This document shows, piece by piece, positions 39,785 to 64,000 of a DNA stretch of 64,000 bases. The stretch lies in the IMG/VR virus record IMGVR_UViG_3300030098_004828, positions 1 to 64,000 of that record. One strand, written 5' to 3'. The translations under genes were made by a program, and so were the position numbers. Under the pieces are notes generated by a model. The model ran no database searches, was not told the DNA's origin, and saw only the letters and a program-made list of their open reading frames with translations. Every line of letters starts with the position of its first letter. Positions within the stretch are counted from its first letter, which is position 1.

Positions 39785-40456
39785 ATGACAACAATAGGTG
39801 ATGTAGTATCAAGAATCAGAAATCAAATGAAAGCTGAATCTCAAGATGCTTTTGTAACTGATAGATATTTATATAGTCTGGTTAGTAAGTTTGCACAACT
39901 TCTAATGAGAAGACAAGACTCTGCTAATAAACTTATGAAATTTAATAGTATATGGCAACCATTGCCGTTTGTTGAATTAATAGAAGTAGATAAAGTAGAA
40001 GCAGAATGTGCAGGAATTCAAAGCGGATGTACTATAAAAAGAACAAAGCATAAACTTCCAACATTTATGGAAGGTTATTGGGGACCTTTAATTAGAACAG
40101 TAAGTTCTATAGATGGATCTATAGAGTGTCAACCTACTATGCCAGGTACCTATACTTCAATGACAAAAACAACATCATTTAAATATAATAAGAATAAGTA
40201 TTTTTGGTGGTTAAATGGTTATATATATATGCCAAATGTAGAATGGGATGCTATAAAGTTAGAAGGTATATTTAATGGAGATATTTCAGAATGGAATTGT
40301 GATGAAAAAGATAATTGTAAACCTAGATATTTACAACAAATTTTTATTCCAGAATTTTTATTTGCAGAAATAGAAAAGATGGTAATAGCTGAAATGTTAA
40401 ATACTATGAAAATACCACAAGAAGATGCAGATAATAAAGTTAATATACAAAGATAA
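39785..40456 (+). CDS. Tail ring/tubular protein
   Basis: TIGDVVSRIRN...YFWWLNGYIY...IPQEDADN; synteny. Confidence 0.6.
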   Translation: MTTIGDVVSRIRNQMKAESQDAFVTDRYLYSLVSKFAQLLMRRQDSANKLMKFNSIWQPLPFVELIEVDKVEAECAGIQSGCTIKRTKHKLPTFMEGYWGPLIRTVSSIDGSIECQPTMPGTYTSMTKTTSFKYNKNKYFWWLNGYIYMPNVEWDAIKLEGIFNGDISEWNCDEKDNCKPRYLQQIFIPEFLFAEIEKMVIAEMLNTMKIPQEDADNKVNIQR

Positions 40457-47300: not shown

Positions 47301-49549
47301 TTGAGAATGTTCTACAAAATCTTTGTATGGAAGCTGTAACAGAAGACATATATGGTGATCCATATACTATAACTGAATATGCTTGTCCAGAAGGTTCAGT
47401 ACAAATAGGAGAAACTCAGGAAGGAATTCCTATTTGTGAATGTACACTTACAGCTGATCCTGAATATGTTGATATTATTACACCAATATCTTTAACAAAT
47501 GAAGAATACTTTACTGATATATCATGGACAGCAAGTTATGATCCAAAAGGTAAAGCATGGATATCATTCCACGATTGGCATCCAGAATTAACAGTATCTA
47601 GTTTAAATCATTTTTTAACAACTAAAACAGGAACAACTGAAGAAGTATTTTGTCCCCCTGGAACTGTACTTAATGAATATGGAGAGTGTGAATATTTAGC
47701 ATGTCCTACAGGATATATTAGTTTAGATGATAGTTCTTCTTTAACATGTTGTGCAGAATTTGTTGAACCTCCAGACGTAGAAACTATAGAAGGAAGTAGG
47801 GATGAAATTACCGCATTGGGTGTTATAAATCCCACCTTCTTAATGAGTATGGAAGATTGGAATAATATTGCCACTGATAATCCTTCGTATCCTGGAACGC
47901 CTAATTGTTATGGTTCAGGTGCCCAATTACAAGCTACTGGAAATCCTGGAATGCATATACATACTCCATTACCATGGACAAGATGTCCATTTGTTACTGA
48001 CCCTTCTGATATGAATGGTACAGGTCTTTCTATAGGGGATCTTACAGTTGATCCAACAACCAATCAGCCTGCTCTTTCACCTGATACACTTCCTACAAAC
48101 CTGTACAATTTTCCAGGGGTTCCTTGTAATCCATCAGACCCCTTTGGATTTGGGTGGATGAATGGTGTTACTTTTCCAGGTTCAAGTGGACCTACTATGA
48201 TGGGTTTTGTTCACGGTATTCAATCTGATATGAATTGGCAAGAAGGTATTTCACAACAAATGAGTGGATCTATGATGCCAAATATGCCTTATCAAGGAAC
48301 TATTGATCTTAGGAATGTTCCACCTGGTCAAGGTATGGATAGTACAGCTCGGTTATTAATTTTTGGTGGATTTAGTCAATGTTGTTATGATGAGTTATTA
48401 TGGGCATCTCCATTTATTAGTGATCAAAGTTGGACTACTTATACTATAAACTTTACTCCGCTTGCTGCATATGATCATATTCATTTTAAAGTAGAGAGTC
48501 AATATTTTAATGCACAAACTGGAGGAGTTAATTATTTACCATGGCAAGGTAATCCTAATTTTGAAATGGTTACAAGTAATCATATGAATGTTGGATTTGC
48601 CGATCCAGGGGATTTTATGAGCCAAGCTTATTTATTAGTAGATAATTTTACAGGAGTTGATCTAACTGTAGAAATCCCTGATGTAACAACATGTAATTGT
48701 CCAGATATAAATGGTATGCCATCTACAATGGTTTTAAATGATGGTTTATTTCAAACTCCTGCTGATCCTCAACAATGTATAGATGCTTGGGAAGAGGATG
48801 GAACTTACGCAGTAATGTGTGTAGTAACAGATTGTGTAGATCCAATTACAATTACTACAGAACCTTCTAATCAAGTAGGTGGAATATGGAGACATAATGA
48901 TCGTTGTGATTTATTTGCTAATTATTATGCAAAACAATATCCTTGGGAAGTTGAACTTGTAGAATCTGTAGGTCAAACAATTGATGTATTAAGAAGTGTT
49001 GAATATCAATTAGAATCCTATGTATATATACAAAATACAGATCTTGATACAGGAGAAATATTAAATCTTAGTTGTGAAGATAGATGGCATGATTTGGAAT
49101 ATAATTTTAATGAGGCTATTATTTATAATACAGAACAAATTTCAGGATTATTAAAAATGGAATTAACTCCAGCTGAAATGAATAATGTTCCATTAATTAC
49201 AGAATATCCAATAGTTAATGCTGCTGATATAGAAATATTATATAGTAAAGTAGAACAGAAATATAGATTTAATCAATTCTGGGATATAACTGCAGATAGA
49301 ACAGCTATAGTATCACAGTTTATTACACAATTAAATGGTTATATTAAAGAACTTAATGAAGATAATTTAAATTATAATAAACCACAATTACAACGTAAAA
49401 GGTTTAGACATTATTGGAATAGAGTTATATTAAGAAGACAACCTGTTGTTAGTTATTATGATGATGAAGGGGAACCAGTATATGTTCCAGAGGATAGAAA
49501 AATGTTACTTAAAATAGTTAATACTAAATTAAATCAATCAGTTAGATAA
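41363..49549 (+). CDS. Tail stabilisation/muzzle protein with vWA and jelly-roll insertions
   Basis: KGMHKD..P, FMRDEQYAF, PIRHHKMP, WISFHDWHP motifs typical of crAss-like tail stabilisation proteins; MIDAS DASSS at 46292. Confidence 0.75.
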   Translation: MAKKQQQQNTPLQNTSNVDTDLFNKGMHKDPNPSFQGRDGFYSHARNAINNSKEGDVNVLGNEPANYLCAEIPYTIIGFIHLTGDNWIVFSTDNSNSVIGRFDDSKCHYEQIVNDPCLSFNTSHLVTGASKEMFDCSWQVYWDDGLNPSRTLNLDDIPYVQIQTTGPLIDGTPCVTYIDAQPLQLDCERLRLHPLMQTPCVTLTKSDTGGLLGNGTYQAFVCYTMNGEKIGDYLGVSNVQSLWDHADTTGALDITITNLDTQFDFFKLVIMSNIKGNIVAKEIGEYSTQQSFISISVISHELISIPTSDIIRRSITFERSDNMYVVNDYLIRSGPTTNFDFNYQPLANQIQTHWVSTAYPADYYNNGGNKTSFMRDEQYAFFIRFIYNTGEKSHSYHIPGRPNGGYAINPINDNTLTGFDAINDINTDNVAWRIRNTAVDASGTLGGIGVILPDGGRVIGKGYMGYWESTELYPSTDPAGRWNSNTGDPNYNLCGTPIRHHKMPDEQTSAVCHLNGQSGTNLEIHLLGVEFVNIQAPVDNDGNFIQNIVGYEILVGSRQGNKSIIAKGLMRNMRRYTLPQADDSRSAAGSVVTAGSAFAEGAPIIHSGVNSGLMPNYPFNDCDRNDPFLRDTQGSGNLYQGGLMTPSIFSADWSGGDTYPLGFTFHSPDTMFKKIYLNPSEVYSYGMRQGQSIGKFKKSERHPGHKLLRDISAFVAALIGTGYAIEQSRGKKTKKVTGAKAMSIGKSGGPWSDNTSGGTFTTNAYTITGGGYTISVAPPALVPTGPITVGAGGGVTTNDNTTDSEVPTANVNPVTGQPYSTGDAPSQDGTVVGNASAGQGIAEQNLVAYENSAGVPLNSGTPWVAGSDTGTPPAPTDPLFADLVSTTIPTTGPGMQNTVDNSENSYALNHGLQSISTTSISTPNQQELRYFRSVRQMHVDALRDTSSYIGPGEEITHEGSRYKSLPGLGQILLKMYQTMNMIALGGQEIIDLIYNLASYQDYAWKYNAHGFYNNVLSPYNNNSQVHRQNVQKARYLSNTIQNITSGIRVNNLHRPKTVAVLTNPITLPVEATVFSIPTSNQDNSRVNLGALTGNPTAYFVRDICAHYVGLKVDFRNQYGQLDGIKQIPAENCTQLFLDNNPMGTTPDVNSVFTSDIIFGGEMYINRYTEKVIMPFFYDYLAEDQPDGTPFDYRLRQNIPSPEYWAFFANYDLSGLVSPVTDLTFNWTGVGGTVPGLPSQFHNLDFPGDDMSTFGGILSALVGNGRGLFVLKEGAVYLHNSGINDFFVESEINVAQRDWKENRGERHYDWLEYTDFDELFHVDSIKDGNFYMYDESLTKAKLSTQLVSWGTIQDLIYDPLIAETCYDYYPKRLIYSLQAQKESKEDFWRIFLPFNYKDFKNPAVVMKPISKNGAMVFYPNLSPTVFQGVDQLTTDMESKITIGDGGLFSQPFQNVVNSDLPHEYGSCESARSVINTPSGLFYISQEQGKIFHYAGQLINIADAGLKHWFNEYLPSRLLNAFPEIENYPEFYDNPVTGIGCQSVYDPKYDLVYFCKKDYEPVPDPDSCIQFDTESGGFIINETECYGTDQDILCPIGYTLEDGVCVLTTECAPDSWDRTMPGEFIETVTRWVPADRCEMDVVFVIDASSSVINNCNTDRAKLMLDSFLNGMQAGMDAGDIQVGMITFNFAANTLPQIGNMDTTNCPDCLSDVLSWNWATAPVQQPDCYGAETMSDYADAKVQCCFTWPLQQTTSVDNVQSFIDNYYCSMGEGDIWNDPAPCNICANLKCTNVIDATWHGMEMLYDPNFARQGVPKKLIVIKDGFHNISPFYPLNTFMTAEGWPNSAYGNLSGGYNEPLWTNHINNTGSSASPATPDYTWDNGTGGNVNYPDYLIEPGTYAVSTTPFAATDQWTAWLNTNIIQNAQYLDPTVGVLEMINLMLYNGVYNATADQYNANTNTNPGLALGNYYSDFTSSTAINDMVENVLQNLCMEAVTEDIYGDPYTITEYACPEGSVQIGETQEGIPICECTLTADPEYVDIITPISLTNEEYFTDISWTASYDPKGKAWISFHDWHPELTVSSLNHFLTTKTGTTEEVFCPPGTVLNEYGECEYLACPTGYISLDDSSSLTCCAEFVEPPDVETIEGSRDEITALGVINPTFLMSMEDWNNIATDNPSYPGTPNCYGSGAQLQATGNPGMHIHTPLPWTRCPFVTDPSDMNGTGLSIGDLTVDPTTNQPALSPDTLPTNLYNFPGVPCNPSDPFGFGWMNGVTFPGSSGPTMMGFVHGIQSDMNWQEGISQQMSGSMMPNMPYQGTIDLRNVPPGQGMDSTARLLIFGGFSQCCYDELLWASPFISDQSWTTYTINFTPLAAYDHIHFKVESQYFNAQTGGVNYLPWQGNPNFEMVTSNHMNVGFADPGDFMSQAYLLVDNFTGVDLTVEIPDVTTCNCPDINGMPSTMVLNDGLFQTPADPQQCIDAWEEDGTYAVMCVVTDCVDPITITTEPSNQVGGIWRHNDRCDLFANYYAKQYPWEVELVESVGQTIDVLRSVEYQLESYVYIQNTDLDTGEILNLSCEDRWHDLEYNFNEAIIYNTEQISGLLKMELTPAEMNNVPLITEYPIVNAADIEILYSKVEQKYRFNQFWDITADRTAIVSQFITQLNGYIKELNEDNLNYNKPQLQRKRFRHYWNRVILRRQPVVSYYDDEGEPVYVPEDRKMLLKIVNTKLNQSVR

Positions 49550-52500
49550 TGAAGTATAGTAAAGACGGATATAAAAGAAATAGTAAGGATAAAAATAATC
49601 CTTATAATATAATACCCTCTGGTAATATTACTATGGAGGGTGTTGACTTTCCTGTATATGGTGTTGATAATTTAGGTAATAGTCAAGTTATGATGCCAGG
49701 TGCTAACTATACATTTCCAGGCAATGAAGTATTTGAAGTCCCTTTAGTACAATTGCAAAAAGGTGGTGAACCCCCATATAAAACTACAGACAATGAAGGT
49801 AATGATTGGGTAATTATTGGAGATCATAAAATATCTGCTGATCATGTAGAGTTATTAGAGGATGGCACTTTGTCTTGGCATGATGTATCAGTATTAAATC
49901 AACTTATAAAAACAGATCCAAATTATAGTATAGATAATAATGGAAATTTTAAATATAAAGGTGAACAAGGAGAAATGTCATTTAAAACACATTTCAGTAG
50001 AAAGTCTAATCCTTTTGTACAATTTTGGGAAAGAAGAAATGTAGATCTTCCAAGAACTTTTATGGATGTAGAAGGTAAGACTATGGAAGAAAAATTTGAA
50101 AATATAGCTCAATTATATGTTGATATGTTTCATCAAATGAAAACAAAAGAATGGGAAGTAGGAGAAGAAGAAGGAGTAAATTGGGATCAAGGAACTGTAA
50201 GTAGTAAAAATGATTTATCTAACTTGACAGATCGTGGTTATCATTTTATGGATGATGAAATAGTAAGTACAGGAGTTGTAGGAAAATTTGATGATTTTTT
50301 TAGAGGTAATTTTAATATCTCAGTAACAGGAGGATTAAAACAAAATGATTTAAAAGAGGCAGTTAAAAAGTTTTTAAGAGATGAATATTTTAAACAAGAC
50401 AAAGAAGAAAGAACAAATTTAGAGTATGAAATACAATATCCATATATAAATGATTTAACAATTACTAAATTAACTGATGTAGAAAAAAGTGGAGAAGCTA
50501 TTAAAGAACATTTTGAAAATGTAAAAGGTAATAAATATCTTGAGCATGAATTAGAAGATTATATAGATGAAGTAAAAAGAACACAAGTTATAACAGGATT
50601 TAAAGCAGTTCATTGGGGACCTGGAAATTCAGAATTAAAATGGGATTCAGGATGGGTTGGTCCTATTGGTACAAATAATACAGATGAAGAAAGCAATAAA
50701 AAAGAAGTTCTTGAATGGTTTGATAATTTAGAACCTAATGAAAAAGAAAACATTGTTGGAGCAATGCCTAATATTAATTTTAATGAAGATTATGATAAAG
50801 ATGATTTCTATAGAGAACTGATATATACACTTCAATTTAATGATCCAGCTGTTTCATCTAGTAGGAATTCTTGGAGAGATAAATTTCCGGCACATCTTTT
50901 ACCACCAGGTTTATCAAATTTACATGATTGGAGTGAAGTAGTAAATGCCAATGAGAATATAGATTGGTTACCAGGTAGTGATATGAGTCATGGATCTAAA
51001 AATCCATATGATGTAAATAGAGGTTATTTGACTGATGATTTTAAACAGACTTTACGTACTGATGAAATGGCAGATACAATTTTTCCGGGACATGGAATTA
51101 GTAATCACTATATGGAGGATACTAGTACTCCAGGATTTGATAATACAATTAAAGGTCATACTATAAATTGGGGAGAAATTGAAAGAGGAAATACAGGTGG
51201 TTGGGGAAGTGTAAGATTAGGTACAAACATATGGCCAAAAAAAGAAGAAAATCCTGAAGTTTGGGGACAGACCCATGATTACTTTAAACAAAACTATCCT
51301 TTTAGATATACACAATTTAAACTTAAATACGGAGATCCTTTAAAAGGAGATAGTAGTGAATGGGAAAAAGCAGTTGAAGATTTTTTAATTGATAAAGAAG
51401 GAGGATATAATAGCCCATGGTTTAATAGAGTTGATGAAGTAACTACAGGAGGACACTATAGTCAAGAAGGGTCTAAAGGAGTTTGTGCAGAAGGATATAT
51501 ACAACAATGGGATGCTTACGGAAATAGATGGATTTGTGTTGAACAAAAAGTTTTTAAAAATGAATCATCTGGATTTGCACAAGATAAACCTATAACATTA
51601 GAAACTAAAAATATAGATTTACTACCTACTTTTATACCAGAATTACCAGCATTTACTAAACAAAATGTTAATGTTTCAGAAACAAATGAAGAAACTAATT
51701 ATCCTAAATATTTAAAATTTAATGATAATTGGGAAAAACAATTAAAACGGTTAGGTATTTGGGATGAAAGAATACAAAAGAAAGTTAATAGACTTAATAC
51801 ACATCCTAGTGCAAGATTTAAAAATGTAGATCATAGTGATTTAAAAACTGAATCAAGTAGTAATGTTTTTGGTATTAAAGATTGGAATACTGGACGTTTA
51901 TTACAAGATGGAGATATAAGTTCTGGTAGTCTTTATTGGACTGAAGGTTTAGGTGATAGATGGTATGAAAGATATTTAAGAAAATTAAATAAAGAAGAAA
52001 ATAGAAAAAATAAATGGAGAAGACAGTCTTCAGGTGTTACAACTTATAAAGATGATTTTAAAGGTTGGGATACATTCACTATGGATTTATATAATAAAGG
52101 AAATCAAACATTTTTTCATCCAGGAGAATTAACAGAAGAAGATTATATCAAATACCTTCAAAGTCATGGAGTAAATGATTTGATAATTAATAAAATATTA
52201 AATCATACAGAAACTTTTAGTGATTCTGAAATTCAAAAAATAATAGATCAAGATCCCGTTATTATGGAAAAATTAAATACATCTGGTGAGCCTGGAGATA
52301 GAGAGGTACCAAAAACTTTACAAGATTATAGAGATAGATTTGGAGTTGAAAATTATAAATATGGAGGCTTTTTACGTAAAGGACAAGATGGGACTAATAC
52401 TGATGATGATGTTGTATTAGATACTGTAGATTTAACTGGTGACAAGGTAGAACAAACATATTATCCTGATTATGACTTTTATGATATATCAGGAGAAAAA

Positions 52501-55500
52501 CAAAAGTTAATAGAAAAATTACAAACGGATGCTTTTAAAGATAGGTATTATAAACATTATGAAAATCTTACTGGCAAACAAATGACTGATGAAGAATACA
52601 ATCAAAGACTTGCAGATCAAATAGCTTTTATACAAGGAGGTTCAGATCAAGCAACACCTATAATGTATACTAGAAATGAAGAAGGTAATATAGATGTTTT
52701 TGAAGAAGGGAAAGGTGGAAAAACTATATATGGACATATGAGTCCTACTTTTTTAAAAGACTATTTTAATACAAGTAGAGGTCATGTACAATATTTATTT
52801 GAAAGAGATGAAAATAATAATATAATAGAAGATGAAAATGGTAATCCAATTATAACTGGTTGGGAAATGTCATTACCAGGAGCAAAAGAATATGAGGCTA
52901 TGGAATGGATGACTGGTCCAGATGGATATTCACAATTTTCTGGTCCTGATGGTGTACATCCTCTTGCTCATTCAACTATGCAACATGAAATTTCTCATTT
53001 ATATAATGCTCCAAATTCACCCTTATGGAGAGGAATAGATGAATATAATGATAGTAATCCTCTTACTGGTGAAATATTTGGTGATCATCAACCATGGTAT
53101 GCTGATGATCATACAAGAGCTATAGAAGAAATTGGTGCAGGTAGAACTATGTTTGAACAAGCTTTAAAAGATTATGGAATATGGGATTCTAATAAAGGAG
53201 AATTTAAAGATAGACATTTAAAAAAATTAGAAAGAGCTATAGCAAAAAATGATGACTTTATAAGAGATCCTCGTGTTGGTAATTATCTTTTTATAAATGC
53301 TAATACAGATCAAGGTATTACAACCCAAAGAACAGAAGTAAATGAATATTTAGAATCATTAGGTTTAGCAAATCCAACTGATTGGTATTTATCTGATTAT
53401 GGAACTGGAATTACTAATCAAATAAGTCCAAGACTAATGCAGTCTGATTTAACTAATAGTTTAAATATAATTAATAGATATGAATCAAAGTATCCTAGTA
53501 TACCTTCAAGAGAAGAAAAAAGAAAAAGGGATTATGATGGAAGTTGGTGGAGAAATGTAAAAAGAATGGAAAAAGAAGATCATAAAATGATGAAAAATTT
53601 TATGTCTGATAAGTTTGATATAACAGAAATACAAGATCCTAATTATGATATTATATATGATTTAAAAGGATCATTTATTGATGAGTATATGCAAAGGGGT
53701 AATATAGAAAAATTAGGAGTTTATGAAGGAAAAGTAGATGGATTAGCAGAATATTTTACAACTGGTGATACATTTGATTATAATCATCCAGGCTTTAAAG
53801 AAATGCCAGATGAGTTTAGAAAAAAATATGAAGTAAAATTTAATGAATTATTATCAGAAGATAATAGAAATAATTTAATTGATATACTTAATAGAACTTC
53901 AAAAGGGTGGAATTATCAACAAGGTAATTTATGGGATGACGAAAAAGAAGTAAGGATACCCTATACTGCACAACAACTTACAGACGAAGATATAATTTTT
54001 TATAAAGATTTTGAAAAGCAATATCAACAATTGTCTAATCAAATTCAACAAGAAATATATGAATATCATAAACATAAAATAGATCAAGGAGGTAAAAATG
54101 TTAAAAAGTATCTTAACGAATGGGCAATGGATAATGACGTTGATGAAACAGTTACAGCAAAAGATGGAAAAGAAATTAATAATTTAAGTCAAAGAATTGC
54201 TAATAATTTAAAATATAATGAACAAAATGATTTTGATTATTTTGGTATTATTAATACTGACAATAAATTAGCTAAAGCAGATGCTGGAAAAGAAATATCA
54301 AATATAATTACAGGTCTTGCAGAGTTTAAAAATGGAGGTGATATAGGAAAAAGTTTTTTAAATTTTGGTAATAAGTTTGGAGAAGAGAATGTACATATCT
54401 TAATGAATCATTTAAAACATAATAATAAAACTAAAAATTTAAAAAAATTACAAGATGGTGGTGATTATATGAAGTTTATTACAGATATGATGAACAACCC
54501 AAATGCTTTCAAAGAAAGATTAAAAAATATAACACCAATTGGATATGATGTTAAACACGCTTTTAATGAAGTAGTTGCCAACAAAAAACTTCCTACATAT
54601 TGGGATGGTAAGCCTCAAACTTGGGAAACATGGGGTGAAAATTTAACATTTATAAATGAGGATGGCGAAGAAGTTTCTGCATATACAAAAGAAAATTTAG
54701 AACTAATAAAGAATACTTCTACAGATGCTTGGCATCTTTATTTAGGATACAAACCAGAAAATAAAACAATGTCTAAATCAGTTTTTAAACCTACTGTAGA
54801 TGTTGATAATCCAAATGCAACATATTATTCTTTTAATAATCCTTTAGATATATGGGGTGACATCAAACATTCTGGTATATTAGACTATGGTGAAGAAGAT
54901 TTTAAAAATTTTTGGGAAGAATCTAATAAAAATAAAAGAGTACCTAAAGGTTATTATAATACTGCAAAATTTGAAAATAAAAGTAAAGGAGAAAAAGAAG
55001 AATTAAATCAGTATATTCAAGTATTAGATTCTTCTGCAGGAGGTTTTGCACTTAAAGATTATCAACTATCTAAAGGTTATGATGAAGAAATTGGATTACC
55101 TTATATAGCTTATTATGATATTTTTGATTTTGATATACCTTTAGCAGGAAGATCAATTAAAGGGAGCAAAGTAGCAGGCAATCCTTATGAAATTTATGGA
55201 AGATTATATTATGATGCAAACTATACTGATGAAGATGGAGATCCTTTTTTAATACCACAAGAATTTATAGGAAGCTATAATATAGACTTTAATGATTTTG
55301 AAAAAGGAATTAGATGGGCTGAAAGTAAAAACGGTATTCTTATGGAAAATCCAAATTCATCTGCAACAGGATTATATCAACAGTTATATGATCAAATTAA
55401 AGAAGAGTATGGAGGCACTAGAGAACAATTTAAAAATGATCTTGCAGCACAAGAGTTTTTCTTTAAGAGAAGGCAAGATGGTGACTTAAGAAAATGTTGT

Positions 55501-58500: not shown

Positions 58501-59538
58501 GGTCAACAAGGTCAATCTGCGCAAGACTTTATAAATTCACAAAAGCATGGGGGTGTTATGTTTCTTAATATTAAAGATTTTACAAGTAAAGGTCTAGATT
58601 GGAGTATGACTAAAGGTAATTTAGGTAGTATAAATCATGAATTAAGACATTTATTATCACCAGTTCAAACTCCACGTCAACTGGATCCATATCAAATTGG
58701 TAGGGTACATATAGAGGTGACAAATAAATTACGAGAATTATATACTAAAAAAGAAAATATACTAAAAGATTCAAATATTCCTGATTATATTAAAAGATCA
58801 AGAACAGGAGAGATTCAAAGACAAATAAATTATTGGTTTGGTGAAGCTGAGGCATATAAAACATTACATGGATTAGATCCTTTAGATATAAAAAGTCTTA
58901 ACGTACCTATAGATGCAAGTTTTGATGTATATAAAAATTACCCTATTTTAAGATCAAGTAAAAGGGGTATGGGTCAAGGTTCAGATCTACAATGGTACTA
59001 TAATAATCCACAGGAACAACAAGTTAGATATGGAAGATTTAGAGAAGTTCTTGAAGATTTTTATGGTTTGGGTAAAGAAAGTAAGCTAACAAAAAAACAA
59101 ATAAAAGCTGTTGGTAATGATTTGGATTATATAATGAATAATATAGATGACTATACTTCTATGAGATGGATAAAAAATATGGGATATACAGATGATGTTC
59201 TTGTAGATTATGCAAAGAGCCATCCACATCTACAATTAGATCCATCAAAAATGTCTGCAGATGATGTCTTAGAATTTATAAGAAAGAATGATGAAAAATT
59301 ATTAAAACTAGAAAACAATCCTATATTTAAGAAATGGGGAATAACAGCAGAAGAGACAGGGATGGGTGCGTATGATGATGTATTAGGATTAATTACGAAG
59401 ATTGAGAATTCAGCTGGTAAACCTTTAAGAACAGGAAGTAAAGCTTGGAGAAAAGAAGTTCTTGATTGGTTTAATAAAGCATGGGCTATAGGTCCTATTG
59501 GAATAGGTGTTGGTACAACTTTAGAACAACAAGAATAA
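49549..59538 (+). CDS. Giant multidomain internal virion/ejected cargo-type protein (2 zincin domains, lytic transglycosylase)
   Basis: HEISH 52984, HELRH 58636, AES...NPNSSATGLYQ 55318-55380, recurring GG/AQDG motifs. Confidence 0.7.
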   Translation: MKYSKDGYKRNSKDKNNPYNIIPSGNITMEGVDFPVYGVDNLGNSQVMMPGANYTFPGNEVFEVPLVQLQKGGEPPYKTTDNEGNDWVIIGDHKISADHVELLEDGTLSWHDVSVLNQLIKTDPNYSIDNNGNFKYKGEQGEMSFKTHFSRKSNPFVQFWERRNVDLPRTFMDVEGKTMEEKFENIAQLYVDMFHQMKTKEWEVGEEEGVNWDQGTVSSKNDLSNLTDRGYHFMDDEIVSTGVVGKFDDFFRGNFNISVTGGLKQNDLKEAVKKFLRDEYFKQDKEERTNLEYEIQYPYINDLTITKLTDVEKSGEAIKEHFENVKGNKYLEHELEDYIDEVKRTQVITGFKAVHWGPGNSELKWDSGWVGPIGTNNTDEESNKKEVLEWFDNLEPNEKENIVGAMPNINFNEDYDKDDFYRELIYTLQFNDPAVSSSRNSWRDKFPAHLLPPGLSNLHDWSEVVNANENIDWLPGSDMSHGSKNPYDVNRGYLTDDFKQTLRTDEMADTIFPGHGISNHYMEDTSTPGFDNTIKGHTINWGEIERGNTGGWGSVRLGTNIWPKKEENPEVWGQTHDYFKQNYPFRYTQFKLKYGDPLKGDSSEWEKAVEDFLIDKEGGYNSPWFNRVDEVTTGGHYSQEGSKGVCAEGYIQQWDAYGNRWICVEQKVFKNESSGFAQDKPITLETKNIDLLPTFIPELPAFTKQNVNVSETNEETNYPKYLKFNDNWEKQLKRLGIWDERIQKKVNRLNTHPSARFKNVDHSDLKTESSSNVFGIKDWNTGRLLQDGDISSGSLYWTEGLGDRWYERYLRKLNKEENRKNKWRRQSSGVTTYKDDFKGWDTFTMDLYNKGNQTFFHPGELTEEDYIKYLQSHGVNDLIINKILNHTETFSDSEIQKIIDQDPVIMEKLNTSGEPGDREVPKTLQDYRDRFGVENYKYGGFLRKGQDGTNTDDDVVLDTVDLTGDKVEQTYYPDYDFYDISGEKQKLIEKLQTDAFKDRYYKHYENLTGKQMTDEEYNQRLADQIAFIQGGSDQATPIMYTRNEEGNIDVFEEGKGGKTIYGHMSPTFLKDYFNTSRGHVQYLFERDENNNIIEDENGNPIITGWEMSLPGAKEYEAMEWMTGPDGYSQFSGPDGVHPLAHSTMQHEISHLYNAPNSPLWRGIDEYNDSNPLTGEIFGDHQPWYADDHTRAIEEIGAGRTMFEQALKDYGIWDSNKGEFKDRHLKKLERAIAKNDDFIRDPRVGNYLFINANTDQGITTQRTEVNEYLESLGLANPTDWYLSDYGTGITNQISPRLMQSDLTNSLNIINRYESKYPSIPSREEKRKRDYDGSWWRNVKRMEKEDHKMMKNFMSDKFDITEIQDPNYDIIYDLKGSFIDEYMQRGNIEKLGVYEGKVDGLAEYFTTGDTFDYNHPGFKEMPDEFRKKYEVKFNELLSEDNRNNLIDILNRTSKGWNYQQGNLWDDEKEVRIPYTAQQLTDEDIIFYKDFEKQYQQLSNQIQQEIYEYHKHKIDQGGKNVKKYLNEWAMDNDVDETVTAKDGKEINNLSQRIANNLKYNEQNDFDYFGIINTDNKLAKADAGKEISNIITGLAEFKNGGDIGKSFLNFGNKFGEENVHILMNHLKHNNKTKNLKKLQDGGDYMKFITDMMNNPNAFKERLKNITPIGYDVKHAFNEVVANKKLPTYWDGKPQTWETWGENLTFINEDGEEVSAYTKENLELIKNTSTDAWHLYLGYKPENKTMSKSVFKPTVDVDNPNATYYSFNNPLDIWGDIKHSGILDYGEEDFKNFWEESNKNKRVPKGYYNTAKFENKSKGEKEELNQYIQVLDSSAGGFALKDYQLSKGYDEEIGLPYIAYYDIFDFDIPLAGRSIKGSKVAGNPYEIYGRLYYDANYTDEDGDPFLIPQEFIGSYNIDFNDFEKGIRWAESKNGILMENPNSSATGLYQQLYDQIKEEYGGTREQFKNDLAAQEFFFKRRQDGDLRKCCGVNSDMKDGMDLWHEFFNIFQEHGKGMPLTPIEVASLVYFQGKSGARRYIKGSLLEELPLSDVIPENISAINKNPTEYLEETQSGIRKYKTGGETGKTERENIYEALQKYESNQQVDKSMYEKLLRLGLVGKTNKEKEEEKIQKQKLKQDQKKKEEKEKLSLTSLWKEFILGGKEDKKNKKKKREDIGYSPIKIEMDVTTDLANKIQNEEYLKAAKTFNQSLQDNKSQIMKATNIDDANYNHIITLAQDMFGEQQNNSGMYNITYEGLSSDEKGILKSLGVISNEDFSNPYKAGIAYATVLALKSKLKLSMGGSLPMPSSYSKLSKLYSADLGTEITDINDKIRLYDEYVNGKFDDHTNKDSMEKLYDKFNRQYYYSAKDSDMPIYDFMKKTSDELVKAQDGKNDIDKVTGKTKREIKSQLKDEGWNRRQRRQIINNTDAEDLYERDVDGNVKLVDYYSRDYRNAYYARNEDGDLGYSGAIATWDDTLKDGKGDWMRWLPTVNLYANSPETDWIENKKNNQSWFAKFIGRDPGKDWMGIEWERSMQNPYYNKRMYETNPVAKAVMDATGNQPGSAPFGYDSWMGLMGDTPYTLLGIPAASTIGAYGPTVGAPILNTADDFAMWLNRGPVGQNISRLWNYNPSKISGTSGLLGGPQYKIPGLTLGNTINSGFAAHGVTNIGPNIYDFSQDPSWGGAGNVGINLLEMSPLYGPTWNYLKSGTSYLGSKMPNFRGTPVGGTTASNRPARVVSPEANVEYQKHLQYLKDNNVVQSPYLQDAIDGSSSVFLKQGDRVGYLTISKLDDGTYVYKNHASATAGKPQIDPKILQQAEDIELKINELRKIREIVNKNYFGVDDAVSMKEKVNLKNQASKLSFETTGYKSVDEVDNAINSLINEHRALNVNYTGSTIKGASANEPLHSIQLIDDVDLNKMNVELNRVINSMNSEHNIQKTMVNTGMNRDQVIKMHNEWLDELIGSKTYIGDFTHSSPYYNYSAMYSRNIAGQQGQSAQDFINSQKHGGVMFLNIKDFTSKGLDWSMTKGNLGSINHELRHLLSPVQTPRQLDPYQIGRVHIEVTNKLRELYTKKENILKDSNIPDYIKRSRTGEIQRQINYWFGEAEAYKTLHGLDPLDIKSLNVPIDASFDVYKNYPILRSSKRGMGQGSDLQWYYNNPQEQQVRYGRFREVLEDFYGLGKESKLTKKQIKAVGNDLDYIMNNIDDYTSMRWIKNMGYTDDVLVDYAKSHPHLQLDPSKMSADDVLEFIRKNDEKLLKLENNPIFKKWGITAEETGMGAYDDVLGLITKIENSAGKPLRTGSKAWRKEVLDWFNKAWAIGPIGIGVGTTLEQQE

Positions 59539-59593
59539 TTTAGCTTATGTGCTTAGAATTTAGTATATTATAATATATAGTAGACTTTTTTAA

Positions 59594-62500
59594 ATGAATA
59601 AAAAATTAAGGAAATATCAAGAAGGTGGTACGGTATCAGAAAACTGTCCTGGACCAGTTCAAAATCCTGAATTGAATACTGCAAATAGAAATGAAGCAAT
59701 TTCTTCAACAAATTATAAAGTTGCAGAAGATTCTAGAAATTGTGCTGGATGCTTATTTTATGATATATCTCCAAGAATGAATTCATGTACAGGATCTAAA
59801 GGTGAAGTAGGATATTGCTGGAAAAATAAATTTGTTTGTCAAGCAGAAAATGTATGTGATATTCATAAATCAGGAGGGCCTATAGAAGAAACATCAGATT
59901 CAATTAAAGCTCAACAAGTAAGTGTTAATGAACTGGAAATGCAAAATTCTCCAGAAATGTTGCAAATGCCTGAAATGCAAATGAATCCAGACCAATATGT
60001 TAAACAATATAAAATGGGTGGTCAAATTCTTACAAAGGCACAAGATGGTTGGTCAGGTTTTCCAATACCAGAAGATACAGAGTCTACTATACAAAATCTT
60101 GGTACAGGAAATATTACTCAGAATCTTATTGAAATAATCAATGGAAATATAGAGAAAAATATATGGGATAAAAAAACATTTGATACAAATTATTGGAATA
60201 CGGATTTAGAAGGTAATCCTCGTCCCACAACTATGAGAAGTTTTAGTAGAAGGGAGCAATGGAATCAAGGAGATGATCCTCTTAATTTTAATAGAGAGTA
60301 TTTTGGATCTTTCACTCATCCTTCAGAAGGTAATCCATACGGAGATTTTTCATTTATGACACAAACAAGCTATCCTAAAGAAAGATCTAAATTAGGAAAA
60401 TTTTTTACAGGGCAAAAATATAATCCTAATAAACAAGAATTTAATCAAGAAATGATATTTGGAGCTGATGCAGCTGCAGCATATGCTGAATCATTTGAAC
60501 AAACTCATGTAACTCAAGATGCTCAAATAGATGAAGATTTATTAATTGCACAAAATTATGGATCTATGTCTCCTGAAATTACATTAACACCTAAAAAATA
60601 TGGTGGATCATTCAGAGCACAGAATGGAACTGAAACTAGTTTATTTGATTTAAATATGGATATAAAAGAAATTTATCCTGATTTAGATGAAATCATTGAA
60701 AATAAAAATTGGGATGATGAAGATATGGATTCTATATTTAGAAATTGGATTGAACAACAAAAAGAAAATATAAATTATAAAGAAAACAAAAGAGAAGGTG
60801 AATCAAGAAAAGATTTTAAAAATAGGTTAGATGATGAAGCTAGTAGATTTTATTATGCGTATCAAGGACTTGAACCACATAGAGAGAAATATTTTATAGA
60901 TAAAGGTAAAGAAAGATTAATAAATTATAGAGAAGGTGAACGAACAGAAAGAGGAGATGCTGCAAAAGAAAAAGCTATAAATTATTTTACTGAATATTTA
61001 GATTCTCCTTTATTAAAAACCAGACTTGAAAATCTTTATCCTGGAGATCCTGAAAAACAACAAGCAGTAATTGATGCTAAAAAAGAACAGCTTTCTGGTT
61101 TATTAATTGAAGAACAAGATCCTCAAGAGTGGCAAAATATGTTGGATGATCCTTTTAGTCTATTTACTACGGATTATTATGATACAGGAACTATATACAA
61201 ACCTAATAAAAATTGGGCTTCTTTTAATGATGCTCAAATGGATTATATCAAAGAAAAAGAGGGTTATGTTCATGATATATTACCGGGTAGTATTGTTAAT
61301 GAAATATCTCATGCTTTAAATGTAAACATTGGTAATGTTCCAAAGAAAGAAGTATATGATGATGAGGCTCTTTATTCACTAGGTTATCTTGGACATCATT
61401 CACCAAAAGAAGTGACTATAAATCCTAATATAGCAATGCATCCATATGAACTTGAATTAGCAGCAAATTTAAAAGAAGATGCTAATCCAAATGAACATGA
61501 TAGAGATGAACATAATGTTAAATCTGATATTGATACAATTAGATATGAGTTATATAATGCTGGTATGTATGATTTTAATGATCCTGATTTTAAATTTACA
61601 CAAGATCATATAGATCATTTACGTAACAATCCCGAGAAGTTTCATAAAAGTCAGTTAATGCTAGATATGTTTGAAGATGAAGATTTATTAAATAACTTAA
61701 ATATATTTACTGATACTTCATCAATGCCTGCTAATATATCTAAATATGGTTCAGAATTAACAAATGCGTTATATAACTATGGAGGTTCATTGCCAAAATT
61801 CCAAGGTAATAATAATAGTGAAACTGGTGATGCTAATCAAATTCCTGAAGGTTCTACTTCAGCGTTTCCACAATATCATACTCAAAGTTTATTGCCTGGT
61901 ATGTATGAGGATAATACTTATAATTTTTTAAGTCCTGAAATTAATGCAATGTTAGAAACAGATAATCAATCATCAGGAGATTTTGATGATAAATCTTTTT
62001 CTGAAGCTTTTGCAGAATATCATAAACTTCTAGGTCCTGGACAAGAATTTACTTGGCAAGGAAAAATATATAGCACAGATATGGCAGATGATGGTTCAGA
62101 ACCTTCAGAAAATAATAATGCTATTAATAATGCAGATTCTAATGCTAATGCTGATAATTCAAATATGAATGATAACAGCGACTCAGAAGAAATTCTTAAT
62201 AATGAAGAAGTAGATGAGTTTAATGAACAACCTCAATTTAAAAACAAAAAAATAAAAGATACTTTTAGAATGGATAATTCTTCTTCATTAGCATTTTTAG
62301 AAAGTAAATCATCTCCTCTTTTTTCTCTTATAGCTGCTATTGGAGATACTGTTGATTCATATAAATCAGAAAATTTTATAGATCCAGGATCTAAAGAAGA
62401 TTATGAAAAATGGTCAATAAAAAACACTACAGATAAAGCCGGTTATATAGATGAGGATGGTAATGTAATATCAGAAAAAGACTATGTAGAAGGAGAAGTT

Positions 62501-64000
62501 CTTAAAGGAATGCAAGAAAGAACTAATTTAGCTCCAGATGTATTTGGGCAAGCAGTGGGTTATGATGCTAATGCAAAAACAGTGGATTATAAAGGAGGTT
62601 CAAAACAAGGAAACTATTTAGAGTCAATGAATCCGGATGCAAATTATTTTGGATTTTCACAAGACACAGAAGGTAATTATATGTTTGAAAACAAATTAGT
62701 TACAGATAACCAAGAAGGTACAGTATATAGTCCTACAAGTCAAACAAGATATAGAAGTGATAAACTTATAACAGGATATGAAGGAGATTATTCAGATGAT
62801 TTTATTCAATATGATGCAGATGCACAAGAGTATATAGATTATTCTAATCCTGATCATGTAATTCCTGATCAAGCAGGATGGCTTACTCCTATAGCTAATC
62901 AACAGCAAAATACAAATAATCCTAATCAACCAACAGGTTCTGATGATATATTTGCTAGATATGGAGGAGGTTTACCTTTGTTTCAAGATAAAGGAGAATT
63001 TAGTATTAATGAACATGGTATAATAGATACATCTGAAATGGAAGGATATGATCCAGATGATCTATATGATTTCCTAGCAGAAAATTATGGTAAAGTAGAT
63101 ACATCTAAACAGCAACAAGCTCTTCTTACAAAATTACAATCTCCAACTTTTAGAGATAGATATGCCGCTAATATATATAATATTACAGGAGAACAATTAT
63201 CTGAAGATGAATTAACAGAAAGAATAAATGCTCAGTATGATTTTACTGCAGCAGGTGCACCATTTCATACTGTATATCCACCAGTTTCACATAGTCCAGG
63301 AGGATTTCCTTATTGGAGTACTACAAATATAAATCCATATCAGCCTAAAGATATTGCAACGATGGACTACTTCGGAACGGGTAATATGATGGATAGAATG
63401 AGGGGTAATAAGGGAATGTTTTTTACTAATAAAGAAGGATATGATATTTCTGAACTACCTATACCAGAACTTGCCCAGTATAGTTTTGTACCTGGTTTAA
63501 ATAAAACAAGACAGGTAGGATGGATGGGTGATAATCCTTGGACTTTTCGTGATGATGCTGATGATACAATTATACATGAGTATGCACATTCATATAATAC
63601 TGATGTATCTCCATTATTTGCACCTGCAGGTAAACAATATATTAATCCAGGAGTTTATTATAATGATAAAGCTGGTGAACGTTATCAAGAATGGTTAACT
63701 AATTTATTTGGTGAAGATTATTTTGATGAAACTAAAACAGATTTTATTTCACAGTGGTCTATGCAACCTCAAGAAATAAGTTCTATGAGATCAGAAAATG
63801 AAGCAGCATTATTATCCTCAGGAATTTGGGATCATAATAAAGAAAAATTTGGTGAGCAACATTTAAATGAATTGTTAGAATCAGATTTTTTATTTCCTAG
63901 AGGTCATTCAATGAAGCATTTACAAGCACTGGGATATGGTGAACTTCGTGGTATGAATAAAGATTTGAGTAAACAACAAAAAGAATATGATCTTCAATTA
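59594..64000 (+). CDS. Second giant multidomain cargo-type protein (truncated at window edge)
   Basis: Not in ORF track (no stop in window); ATG 59594 MNKKLRKYQEGG...; Cys module, NEISH 61298, HEYAH 63575, same GG motifs. Confidence 0.75.
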   Translation, partial: MNKKLRKYQEGGTVSENCPGPVQNPELNTANRNEAISSTNYKVAEDSRNCAGCLFYDISPRMNSCTGSKGEVGYCWKNKFVCQAENVCDIHKSGGPIEETSDSIKAQQVSVNELEMQNSPEMLQMPEMQMNPDQYVKQYKMGGQILTKAQDGWSGFPIPEDTESTIQNLGTGNITQNLIEIINGNIEKNIWDKKTFDTNYWNTDLEGNPRPTTMRSFSRREQWNQGDDPLNFNREYFGSFTHPSEGNPYGDFSFMTQTSYPKERSKLGKFFTGQKYNPNKQEFNQEMIFGADAAAAYAESFEQTHVTQDAQIDEDLLIAQNYGSMSPEITLTPKKYGGSFRAQNGTETSLFDLNMDIKEIYPDLDEIIENKNWDDEDMDSIFRNWIEQQKENINYKENKREGESRKDFKNRLDDEASRFYYAYQGLEPHREKYFIDKGKERLINYREGERTERGDAAKEKAINYFTEYLDSPLLKTRLENLYPGDPEKQQAVIDAKKEQLSGLLIEEQDPQEWQNMLDDPFSLFTTDYYDTGTIYKPNKNWASFNDAQMDYIKEKEGYVHDILPGSIVNEISHALNVNIGNVPKKEVYDDEALYSLGYLGHHSPKEVTINPNIAMHPYELELAANLKEDANPNEHDRDEHNVKSDIDTIRYELYNAGMYDFNDPDFKFTQDHIDHLRNNPEKFHKSQLMLDMFEDEDLLNNLNIFTDTSSMPANISKYGSELTNALYNYGGSLPKFQGNNNSETGDANQIPEGSTSAFPQYHTQSLLPGMYEDNTYNFLSPEINAMLETDNQSSGDFDDKSFSEAFAEYHKLLGPGQEFTWQGKIYSTDMADDGSEPSENNNAINNADSNANADNSNMNDNSDSEEILNNEEVDEFNEQPQFKNKKIKDTFRMDNSSSLAFLESKSSPLFSLIAAIGDTVDSYKSENFIDPGSKEDYEKWSIKNTTDKAGYIDEDGNVISEKDYVEGEVLKGMQERTNLAPDVFGQAVGYDANAKTVDYKGGSKQGNYLESMNPDANYFGFSQDTEGNYMFENKLVTDNQEGTVYSPTSQTRYRSDKLITGYEGDYSDDFIQYDADAQEYIDYSNPDHVIPDQAGWLTPIANQQQNTNNPNQPTGSDDIFARYGGGLPLFQDKGEFSINEHGIIDTSEMEGYDPDDLYDFLAENYGKVDTSKQQQALLTKLQSPTFRDRYAANIYNITGEQLSEDELTERINAQYDFTAAGAPFHTVYPPVSHSPGGFPYWSTTNINPYQPKDIATMDYFGTGNMMDRMRGNKGMFFTNKEGYDISELPIPELAQYSFVPGLNKTRQVGWMGDNPWTFRDDADDTIIHEYAHSYNTDVSPLFAPAGKQYINPGVYYNDKAGERYQEWLTNLFGEDYFDETKTDFISQWSMQPQEISSMRSENEAALLSSGIWDHNKEKFGEQHLNELLESDFLFPRGHSMKHLQALGYGELRGMNKDLSKQQKEYDLQL

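What the first reader, a model, noticed from the sequence alone, without database searches (positions are those of the whole stretch)
49549..64000. Recurring YGG / AQDG linker motif punctuates two giant proteins: candidate cargo polyprotein system
Seen: LQKGGE (~49753), YKYGG-FLRK-GQDG (52354-92), AKDGKE (54157), KADAGKE (54274), FKNGGD (54325), LQDGGD (54448), YKTGGE (55765), LSMGGS (56425), KAQDGK (56692); in the next ORF YQEGG (59615), YKMGG-QILTK-AQDG (60008-49), KKYGG-SFR-AQNG (60593-628), SKYGSE and YNYGG-SLPK-FQG (~61740-61808), ARYGG-GLPL-FQDKGE (62954). The motif is often bipartite and falls at borders of recognisable domains: it brackets zincin modules 1 and 3, closes the transglycosylase module and opens zincin 4. 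I did not notice it in capsid, portal or tail proteins. Inference: a protease cleavage site (diglycine-type) releasing separate effectors, or a repeated capsid-loading/ejection tag that lets domains be shuffled as cassettes. No canonical prohead protease was recognised in the head module, so an internal zincin is a candidate processing enzyme.
Basis: partly seen in the sequence, partly recalled or inferred. Interest (0 to 1): 0.8.

Follow-up and report, generated by a model that had tools for sequence, protein, structure and literature searches.

The report
Junction motif in crAss-like cargo proteins
A short peptide (about KYGG-x-LPKAQ-x-G) really does recur at the joints between modules of the giant proteins that a marine crAss-like phage most likely carries in its virion, it is shared by dozens of related uncultured phages, and modules are gained and lost exactly at it, but whether it is cut by a protease is still untested.

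Summary
All listed sites are at the stated coordinates. The bipartite form [YM]GG-x(1-5)-[AFG]Q occurs 8 times in ORFs A, B and C, against 0.14 in shuffles and 0 in the other 16.4 kaa.

The window is positions 1-64000 of a 245.6-kb marine crAss-like contig. A, B and C follow the ring and muzzle genes, where crAss001 encodes its cargo proteins.

The DNA pattern for YGGxLPKAQxG hits 42 other viral contigs, always in frame in long ORFs. In 596 Gb of cellular genomes it hits only two misbinned phage contigs.

The motif lies in low-confidence coil flanking a folded module, and at the edge of a conserved N-terminal domain. Homology blocks stop at it.

Two 97%-identical relatives differ by a 716-aa, two-module indel. 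Its ends lie in 24 identical nucleotides that encode the motif.

So it is a module-junction signal of polyvalent cargo proteins, and cassette shuffling at it is shown. Cleavage is my preferred mechanism but is unproven. No protease family was found in the window. Motif and HExxH do not co-occur within proteins. The zincin and transglycosylase labels rest on motifs only.

The parts
39785..41352 (+). CrAss_Ring_2 (39785-40456) and CrAss_Ring_1 (40456-41352) tail ring genes. They anchor the synteny.
   Evidence: Pfam PF25702 at 7e-18 and PF24228 at 1.5e-8
41363..49549 (+). ORF U, 2728 aa, muzzle-protein homologue. It carries no motif.
   Evidence: 46-47% identical to genes annotated PF25731 crAss_MUZ in L047 and L048. 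Weak match to crAss001 gp44. PHROG virion structural protein. No motif.
49549..59538 (+). ORF A, 3329 aa, A-type cargo or polyvalent protein
   Evidence: It is the gene directly after the muzzle gene, as in L047 and L048. It shares modules with more than 100 metagenomic proteins.
49549..49752 (+). Conserved N-terminal beta domain of A (aa 1-68)
   Evidence: Homology to more than 90 relatives ends at aa 68. In alignment A3, P65, A67, Q68 and G70 are nearly invariant and the sequences then diverge completely. AlphaFold places strands at 20-65 with pLDDT about 90.
49753..49770 (+). LQKGGE, a degenerate AQxG junction closing the N-terminal domain
   Evidence: Positional equivalent of P-x-AQ-x-G in relatives. 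pLDDT is below 50 at aa 70-72.
52354..52392 (+). Full bipartite motif YKYGGFLRKGQDG (A aa 936-948), which opens zincin-like module 1
   Evidence: BLAST blocks to B and to many relatives start at aa 936-939.
52393..54156 (+). Zincin-like module 1 of A, with HEISH at 52984-52998
   Evidence: 27% identical to B 1122-1427, E 9e-15. HExxH is invariant in alignment A2. No Pfam or PDB support.
54157..54174 (+). AKDGKE, a degenerate first half-motif at the end of module 1
   Evidence: A 875-1543 aligns at 53% identity to P0001 261-939. That alignment ends at P0001's MAKYGAELPKAQYG junction, which follows the conserved YLNE(W/I)AM helix.
54274..54465 (+). KADAGKE (54274-54294), FKNGGD (54325-54342) and LQDGGD (54448-54465), half-site-like elements in a stretch without homologues
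   Evidence: Present. Only the post hoc pattern test supports them. No homologue covers aa 1543-1897.
55270..55764 (+).
   Evidence: Conserved block in more than 20 relatives (alignment A4). Pfam finds no SLT in any member. hhalign against the canonical SLT of relatives gives probability 0.1.
55765..55782 (+). YKTGGE, a first half-motif closing that module
   Evidence: Several BLAST blocks end exactly at aa 2078. Relatives have K-x-GG-[ES] at the same place.
56425..56442 (+). LSMGGS, a GG-[ES] junction before the domain that forms the C-terminus of relatives
   Evidence: Relatives have KKGGE or KRGGE immediately before their last, about 70-aa, YDKLNR domain.
56692..56709 (+). KAQDGK, a second half-motif at a fusion point
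   Evidence: A 2171-2373 aligns to the extreme C-terminus of more than 15 relatives. A continues for 945 aa after this half-motif.
58636..58650 (+). Second HExxH of A (HELRH)
   Evidence: Family not identified.
59594..64000 (+). ORF B, B-type cargo protein. It runs off the window. The full gene is contig 59594-67312, 2572 aa (L001:10001-17719).
   Evidence: The C-terminal tail and synteny match the B-type genes of L047 and L048.
59603..59629 (+). KLRKYQEGG, an N-terminal leader resembling the second half-motif
   Evidence: B-type relatives and other proteins also begin with K-x-[AYQ]-Q-x-G-G within the first 25 aa.
60008..60049 (+). Bipartite motif YKMGGQILTKAQDG (B aa 139-152)
60593..60628 (+). 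Bipartite motif KKYGGSFRAQNG (B aa 334-345)
61739..61807 (+). Extended motif SKYGSELTNALYNYGGSLPKFQG (B aa 716-738). It is repeated at B aa 2309-2329, outside the window.
62954..62998 (+). Bipartite motif ARYGGGLPLFQDKGE (B aa 1121-1135), which opens the zincin-like cassette
   Evidence: BLAST block starts cluster at aa 1120-1135. It lies in the pLDDT<50 segment of the AlphaFold model.
62999..64000 (+). Zincin-like cassette of B, with HEYAH at 63575-63589. It ends outside the window at AKYGGSLPKAQDG (contig 64403-64441).
   Evidence: Folded core at model residues 20-478, pTM 0.72. The family has only 38 representatives among 1.84 billion proteins. It is 41% identical to a cassette located in the A-type genes of L047 and L048.

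Best explanation
The motif is a module-junction peptide. Its consensus is [KR]-[YF]-G-G-x-L-P-K-[AFY]-Q-x-G, often followed by E. It is built from two related half units, A-[QK]-x-G-G and P-x-A-Q-x-G.

It is specific to the giant 'polyvalent' proteins that a marine clade of crAss-like phages encodes after the tail ring and muzzle genes. Those proteins are presumably packed in the virion and ejected into the host.

Shown:
- It sits in unstructured joints between independently folding modules.
- It is confined to these proteins and to these phages.
- It is kept at the protein level across diverged phages while the flanks diverge.
- Modules are inserted, deleted and moved between cargo genes exactly at it. 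In one pair of relatives this happened by recombination across the 24 or so identical nucleotides that encode it.

Inferred: a peptide conserved this strongly in a linker is a recognition site for a step that every module undergoes. I think the most likely step is proteolytic separation of the modules, in the capsid or after ejection. The zincin-like modules carried by the same set of cargo proteins, acting in trans, would be the enzyme. This is analogous to the short leader and cleavage sites of phage T4 internal proteins. The recombination at its coding DNA is a consequence that makes the cargo set evolvable.
For: - Enrichment and exclusivity within the contig.
- 42 other IMG/VR contigs carry the exact degenerate DNA pattern, in frame, in ORFs of 256 to about 2,700 aa, many cut by a contig end.
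- 596 Gb of bacterial and archaeal genomes give only 2 hits, both A-type or C-type phage genes in misbinned MAG contigs.
- 200 sites in 148 relatives, with L 76%, P 84%, K 67% and A 85% before the Q and G 84% two residues after it.
- Synteny Ring2-Ring1-MUZ-A-B-C-D. At least 37 of 44 motif loci carry markers of the same phage clade.
- Carriers include ART-PolyVal, SLT, LysM, YkuD and SET domains, that is, polyvalent proteins.
- Both motif copies flanking B 1135-1600 lie in pLDDT<50 coil around a folded core.
- The junction after A's N-terminal domain is a low-confidence loop.
- Internal BLAST block ends lie within 20 aa of a motif in 50 of 444 cases, against 19.2 +/- 4.3 for random placement. 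Block ends pile up on the motif in A and B.
- The N-terminal domain alignment stays conserved up to P-x-AQ-x-G and then diverges.
- L015 and L019 are 97% identical but differ by 716 aa bounded by motif copies that share 24 identical nucleotides.
- Synonymous codons differ among the 8 copies in this contig, so selection acts on the peptide.
- The hypothesis that zincins process polyvalent proteins is already published (PMC5512222).
Against: - Cleavage is not demonstrated by anything here.
- No peptidase family is detected among the window's other 43 ORFs.
- The HExxH modules have no Pfam, PDB-sequence or Foldseek support as zincins.
- Motif and HExxH are not associated within proteins: 53 motif-bearing relatives have no HExxH.
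- AlphaFold gave no confident docking of the flanking motifs on the module.
- The residue after Q is variable, which is unusual for a P1' position.
- crAss001 cargo proteins lack the motif, and no processing is reported for them.
- Part of the breakpoint statistic is trivial, because the motif itself extends alignments up to it.
Confidence: 0.5

Rival explanations
1. An uncleaved docking or handling tag. Each junction peptide binds a virion component such as the capsid interior, a scaffold, the portal or the tail barrel rings. That would load the long multi-module chains into the procapsid and order them for N-to-C ejection. The chains stay intact.
For: - In crAss001, short segments of cargo protein gp45 are bound to the portal, the ring proteins and the muzzle, and no proteolysis is reported.
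- No protease gene was found in the window.
- The motif is also present at the N-termini of separate proteins, for example B, the L011 660-aa ORF and L014, where a cleavage site is not needed to separate modules.
- It is confined to cargo proteins.
Against: - One tag per chain would suffice for a covalently linked protein, yet B has about 8.
- AlphaFold sees only coil.
- crAss001 cargo lacks the motif.
- No partner has been identified.
Confidence: 0.25
2. A passive flexible joint that persists because cassettes are copied together with their linkers and because the repeat favours recombination. On this view nothing recognises the peptide.
For: - The zincin-like modules of A and B are paralogues whose alignment starts at the motif.
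- The recombination event runs across identical motif DNA.
- A Sak4-like single-strand annealing protein is encoded in the window.
Against: - Specific residues (L, P, K, A, Q, G) are kept in linkers between unrelated modules and across phages whose flanks have diverged completely.
- Synonymous sites vary, so the DNA is not what is conserved.
- Ordinary linkers do not keep an invariant Gln.
Confidence: 0.15
3. A chance or compositional artefact of Gly-, Lys- and Gln-rich giant proteins.
For: Some single half-sites (Y..GG) are no more frequent than in shuffles.
Against: 8 observed against 0.14 expected, 0 in 16.4 kaa of other proteins, and recurrence in 42 other contigs.
Confidence: 0.01

Closest known systems
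Polyvalent proteins of phages and conjugative elements (Iyer, Burroughs, Anand, de Souza, Aravind 2017, PMC5512222)
   Same: Giant multi-module phage proteins. Relatives carry ART-PolyVal (PF18760), SLT, LysM, SET and HExxH modules interspersed between other domains. Release of modules by the zincin-like peptidases was proposed there.
   Different: A search of that paper's main text for 'linker', 'motif', 'cleavage' and 'processing' turned up no conserved junction motif. A and B themselves match none of the Pfam polyvalent-protein domains.
Cargo proteins of Bacteroides phage crAss001 (gp45, gp46, gp47, gp49, gp50; PMC10172136)
   Same: Same genomic position directly after the ring and muzzle genes. 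They are large proteins stored in capsid and tail and ejected before or with the DNA.
   Different: No detectable sequence similarity, and no motif in gp44-gp50. Neither 'proteoly' nor 'cleav' occurs in that paper's main text.
Capsid-targeting leader plus gp21 cleavage sites of phage T4 internal proteins, and the gp175 sites of phiKZ inner-body proteins (own knowledge, not checked here)
   Same: A short consensus peptide recurring in proteins packed inside the head and absent from other proteins.
   Different: Those systems have an identified prohead protease and cut after Glu. Here no protease is identified, and the consensus is Gly-Gly ... Ala-Gln-x-Gly.
Pre-toxin demarcation motifs of bacterial polymorphic toxins, for example PT-VENN of contact-dependent inhibition toxins (PMC3482391)
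   Same: A short conserved element at the border where variable cassettes are swapped by recombination. [quoted passage not shown]
   Different: Those are bacterial, with a single site before a C-terminal toxin. Here the element is in a phage, occurs many times per protein, and has an unrelated sequence.
Gly-Gly-X and Gln-Gly cleavage sites of viral polyprotein proteases such as adenain, ASFV pS273R and 3C-like enzymes (own knowledge)
   Same: The sequence flavour of the two halves.
   Different: No homologue of such cysteine or serine proteases was detected in the window. The residue after Gln is variable rather than small.

Membership tests
Polyvalent proteins (sensu Iyer et al. 2017) | Several unrelated effector or enzymatic domains in one giant polypeptide of a phage or conjugative element | tested here: met
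   A and B share the N-terminal domain and the zincin-like cassette with proteins carrying ART-PolyVal, SLT, LysM, YkuD and SET. A and B each have two HExxH modules. Pfam names nothing in A or B themselves.
Polyvalent proteins (sensu Iyer et al. 2017) | Zincin-like metallopeptidase module: HExxH helix, a downstream Glu helix and a three-stranded sheet | tested here: inconclusive
   H-E-x-x-H and a downstream E-I-S-S Glu are invariant in 14 sequences. The AlphaFold topology fits: strands, then the HExxH helix, then a second helix. There is no Pfam, PHROG, PDB-sequence or Foldseek match. The Atlas gives only a weak lead to LPD23.
Polyvalent proteins (sensu Iyer et al. 2017) | Delivered into the host together with the DNA | not testable with these tools
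   Only synteny with the crAss001 cargo genes supports it.
Crassvirales virion cargo proteins | Encoded immediately downstream of the ring and muzzle genes | tested here: met
   CrAss_Ring_2, CrAss_Ring_1, the muzzle homologue U, then A, B, C and D. The order is the same in L047 and L048.
Crassvirales virion cargo proteins | Sequence homology to crAss001 gp45 or gp46 | tested here: not met
   BLASTP of A-D against gp44-gp50 gives only E values above 0.2 for A, C and D. U matches gp44 weakly.
Crassvirales virion cargo proteins | Detected in purified virions | not testable with these tools
   No cultured relative: tblastn of A, C, D and P0011 against 50,697 phage records finds nothing relevant.
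Head-maturation cleavage-site motifs (T4 or phiKZ type) | Short consensus recurring in packaged proteins and absent from other proteins | tested here: met
Head-maturation cleavage-site motifs (T4 or phiKZ type) | A cognate prohead protease gene in the head module | tested here: not met
   No peptidase family among 43 further ORFs of the window, including those between portal and capsid genes. The remaining 181 kb of the contig was not seen.
Head-maturation cleavage-site motifs (T4 or phiKZ type) | Experimentally observed cuts at the motif | not testable with these tools
   Needs proteomics.
Cassette demarcation motifs (polymorphic-toxin type) | Conserved short element exactly at the border between conserved and variable or exchangeable modules | tested here: met
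Cassette demarcation motifs (polymorphic-toxin type) | Recombination between copies of the element changes the module content | tested here: met
   One natural case, L015 against L019: a 716-aa indel with its junction inside 24 identical nucleotides. No well-supported case was seen within this phage's own population.
SLT lytic transglycosylase (A aa about 1908-2072) | Match to the SLT family profile | tested here: not met
   No PF01464 hit in A or in 10 homologous segments even at E <= 1. hhalign against the canonical SLT segments of relatives gives probability 0.1. Only the E-S and GLYQQ motifs resemble SLT.

The most novel reading that the evidence does not exclude
Marine crAss-like phages use one universal junction peptide as a plug-and-play connector. 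The same dozen or so residues would be both the site where packed polyproteins are cut, or handed over, into individual effectors and the recombination joint through which effector cassettes are traded between cargo genes and between phages. That would be a virion-borne counterpart of bacterial polymorphic toxin systems.
Probability: 0.3. Interest if true: 0.8.

Novelty: new variant of a known kind. Interest (0 to 1): 0.6.

Why it matters
crAss-like phages carry several megadaltons of protein cargo. Nobody knows how it is chosen, loaded, ordered or released.

A conserved, cargo-specific junction peptide gives a concrete handle:
- It predicts where the giant proteins are cut or gripped.
- It delimits modules of unknown function for expression and structure work.
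- It explains how the cargo repertoire diversifies so quickly.
- It gives a simple sequence tag for finding cargo proteins in uncultured marine phage genomes.

Tried and rejected
- Pfam and PHROGs on A, B, C, D and on motif carriers. Nothing for A-D. Relatives gave ART-PolyVal, SLT, LysM, YkuD, SET and DUF5872.
- PDB sequence searches with U, A, B and the zincin profile. No hit.
- Foldseek of both AlphaFold models against the PDB. No match with E <= 0.001.
- ESM Atlas. Only a sub-threshold lead to LPD23.
- tblastn against cultured phages with A 1-1150, P0011, C and D. No usable relative, hence no experimental data to borrow.
- Literature search for the string LPKAQ. Nothing relevant.
- N- and C-terminal half-motif statistics. 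C-terminal KYGG-like ends occur in 12 of 88 ORFs against a 5.7% background; N-terminal ones are few. This is suggestive only.
- Within-protein association of the motif with HExxH. None.
- Reads and contigs from four marine metagenomes laid on B. The phage is present from 2014 to 2025. The joints seen have short sides and are unreliable. Some loose ends fall on motif DNA, which fits shared motif sequence in co-occurring phages and nothing more.
- An internal Shine-Dalgarno or internal-start reading of GGAGG in the Gly-Gly codons. Rejected, because the codons vary and no conserved start follows.
- A concatemer explanation for the 245-kb contig. Unlikely, because the pattern hit this contig at only one place.


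Full report
**What the window is.** A protein-based scan of IMG/VR places the window at positions 1-64000 of contig IMGVR_UViG_3300030098_004828, which is 245,646 bp long. Locus L001 extends the sequence to position 74000. G+C is about 30%.

The terminase, portal and capsid genes match PHROG families. The portal is distantly related to those of Crassvirales, Cellulophaga and Flavobacterium phages. Window 39785-40456 is CrAss_Ring_2 and 40456-41352 is CrAss_Ring_1.

The next gene, U (41363-49549, 2728 aa), is 46-47% identical to genes annotated crAss_MUZ in two marine contigs. Four large genes follow:
- A, 49549-59538, 3329 aa.
- B, 59594 to contig 67312, 2572 aa. Only its first 1469 aa are in the window.
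- C, 875 aa.
- D, 1216 aa.

The order Ring2-Ring1-MUZ-A-B-C-D is conserved in L047 and L048. It corresponds to the position of the cargo genes gp45 onward of crAss001. Those products were found in virions and are thought to be ejected (PMC10172136).

The phage is found in marine metagenomes from 2014 to 2025.

**The observation.** The main counts are:

| Pattern | A+B+C | Shuffle mean | Rest of proteome (16,411 aa) |
|---|---|---|---|
| [YM]GG-x(1-5)-[AFG]Q | 8 (A 1, B 6, C 1) | 0.14 | 0 |
| LP[KL][AF]Q | 6 | 0.01 | 0 |
| Y..GG | 5 | 2.2 | 3 |

For [LFYM][KQS].GG[EDS], A alone has 5 sites against a shuffle mean of 0.16, B has 1, and the rest of the proteome has 0.

Without any prior pattern, the only over-represented exact 4-mers in A+B+C are TTTT, PKAQ and LPKA. 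The half-site pattern [LFYM][KQS].GG[EDS] was written after seeing the sites, so its enrichment carries less weight. The bare Y..GG is not enriched.

The part of B outside the window adds AKYGGSLPKAQDG, GKYGKEIPLPKAQMW and GKYGTELTNALYGGLPKAQIG. C adds FMYGGDLPKAQNG.

**The motif is a family trait, not a local oddity.**
- The degenerate DNA pattern for Y-G-G-x-L-P-K-A-Q-x-G matches 43 stretches of IMG/VR. That is 42 besides this contig. Every match is in frame in a long ORF.
- The same pattern in 596 Gb of bacterial and archaeal genomes matches twice. Both hits are A-type or C-type phage genes on contigs binned into MAGs.
- At least 37 of the 44 motif loci carry markers of the same phage clade.
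- An exhaustive profile search with the zincin-like module found only 38 representative proteins. A search with one of them, P0011, found 475 proteins. All are metagenomic, and they form mosaics with ART-PolyVal, SLT, LysM, YkuD, PG_binding_1 and SET.
- These are polyvalent proteins in the sense of Iyer et al. (PMC5512222).
- In 148 such proteins there are 200 motif sites, about one per 1000 aa. The consensus is K/F-K/G-Y/G-G-G-S-L-P-K-A-Q-x-G-x-E.
- crAss001 gp44-gp50 lack the motif.
- No cultured phage has homologues of A (residues 1-1150 tested), C or D.

**Anatomy of the motif.**
- The first half is often M-A-[KQR]-[YD]-G-G and the second is L-P-K-[AFY]-Q-x-G. Both are versions of A-Q-x-G.
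- Either half can stand alone:
  - The universal N-terminal domain of A-type proteins ends in P-x-A-Q-x-G. In alignment A3, P65, A67, Q68 and G70 are nearly invariant, after which 60 sequences diverge completely.
  - The last domain of A-type relatives is preceded by K-K-G-G-E.
- B-type proteins and several others begin with a K-x-[AYQ]-Q-x-G-G leader. The YQEGG at the start of B is of this kind.

**The motif is at module borders and outside folds.**
- AlphaFold2, run with a 14-sequence alignment on B 1115-1625, gives a folded core at model residues 20-478 (mean pLDDT 73.5, pTM 0.72). Both motif copies lie in the pLDDT<50 coil at either end.
- A 1-130, run with 60 sequences, gives a beta domain with strands 20-65. 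pLDDT falls below 50 at residues 70-72, inside LQKGGE.
- BLAST blocks of relatives on B start at 1120-1135 and end at 1607-1628, which is on the two motif copies.
- On A, blocks end at 68, start at 936-939, and several end at 2078.
- Over 50 proteins, 50 of 444 clustered internal block ends lie within 20 aa of a motif. Random placement gives 19.2 +/- 4.3, with a maximum of 39 in 2000 trials. Part of this is trivial, since the motif itself aligns.

**Cassettes move at the motif.**
- The L015 protein (1972 aa) and the L019 protein (2688 aa) are 97% identical over 1455 aa. They differ by a 716-aa segment containing two modules. Its ends are motif copies.
- At the DNA level, the two flanking copies in L019 share 24 identical nucleotides, and the L015 junction lies within them.
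- The zincin-like cassette that sits in B here (1128-1699) sits in the A-type gene in L047 and L048, at 41% identity.
- A 2171-2373 aligns to the very C-terminus of more than 15 relatives. A then continues, after VKAQDG, for 945 aa.
- B has about 215 aa inserted after LPKAQIG, where P0005 runs straight into the C-terminal tail.
- Synonymous codons differ among the eight copies in this contig. The peptide, not the DNA, is what is conserved.
- A Sak4-like annealing protein is encoded at 1568-2251 on the minus strand.

**Mechanism.** What is shown is a cargo-specific, protein-level conserved junction signal at which modules are exchanged. What recognises it is inferred. I rank the options as follows.
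- Proteolytic separation comes first.
  - For it: many copies per chain, leader-like copies at N-termini, several HExxH modules in the same gene set, and the published zincin-processing hypothesis.
  - Against it:
    - No peptidase family was found in the window.
    - The zincin assignment has no database support.
    - Motif and HExxH are not associated within proteins.
    - AlphaFold did not dock the motif on the module.
    - The residue after Gln is variable.
- An uncleaved docking tag is a serious rival, given the bound gp45 segments in crAss001.
- A purely passive linker is unlikely, given the residue-level conservation.

The four HExxH sites exist: A 1146 and 3030, B 1328 and 1860. 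The 'transglycosylase' of A is a conserved block with E-S and GLYQQ motifs, but it matches neither Pfam SLT nor the canonical SLT of relatives.

**Verdict.** I found no description of this motif in the searchable literature. I rate it as a new feature of a known kind of protein.

Noticed in passing
L001:17639-17716 (contig 67232-67309, just outside the window): B ends in a conserved tail, KEGGEMDLDEETINQLIAAGAEIEIL. Near-identical tails (GGE.E.D......LIAAGA[DE]IEI[LI], then stop) end B-type proteins in L012, L013, L014, L047, L048, P0005 and P0072. This looks like a C-terminal signal of its own.
   Followed up: partly
window 49549-49752: The first 68 aa of A form a beta-rich domain conserved at 40-87% identity in more than 90 metagenomic proteins that diverge completely afterwards. 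It has no PDB fold match. It is a candidate for the part that engages the tail or muzzle, or that leads ejection.
   Followed up: partly
window 61739-61807 and contig 66518-66580: A longer repeat, KYG[ST]ELTNALY..GG.LPK[AF]Q.G, occurs twice in B. It also occurs, as KYGAEISNYL, before the C-terminal tail of P0005 and P0072.
   Followed up: no
window 1568-2251 (-): Sak4-like single-strand annealing protein (PHROG 2872, 6e-63), next to helicase, primase and exonuclease genes. It could support recombination across short repeats such as the motif-coding DNA.
   Followed up: no
whole contig (IMGVR_UViG_3300030098_004828): The contig is 245,646 bp, much longer than the roughly 100-kb crAss001 genome. 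The motif pattern hit it at one place only, so it does not look like a simple two-fold concatemer.
   Followed up: no
L045 (JBLHPD010000256.1) and L046 (CBDHFF010000001.1, 120,283 bp): Two contigs filed as bacterial MAGs ('Clostridium sp.' and 'Rickettsiales bacterium') encode A-type and C-type cargo proteins and other markers of this phage clade. They are probably misbinned phage contigs.
   Followed up: partly
L002, L006, L011, L017, L029, L037, L044: Relatives with terminase and portal 70-76% identical to the window's carry one or two extra motif-bearing genes. In L006 and L011 these are a 660-aa ORF starting MKKLRRAQKG and an ORF of 1141 aa. They lie upstream of the terminase module, where the window has none.
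   Followed up: partly
L001:17722-20349 (gene C): C-type proteins keep the first 260-340 aa and the last 200-350 aa, but the middle differs by up to about 900 aa between phages. In C the motif comes straight after a Pro/Gln/Met-rich low-complexity stretch at the end of the conserved N-terminal part.
   Followed up: partly
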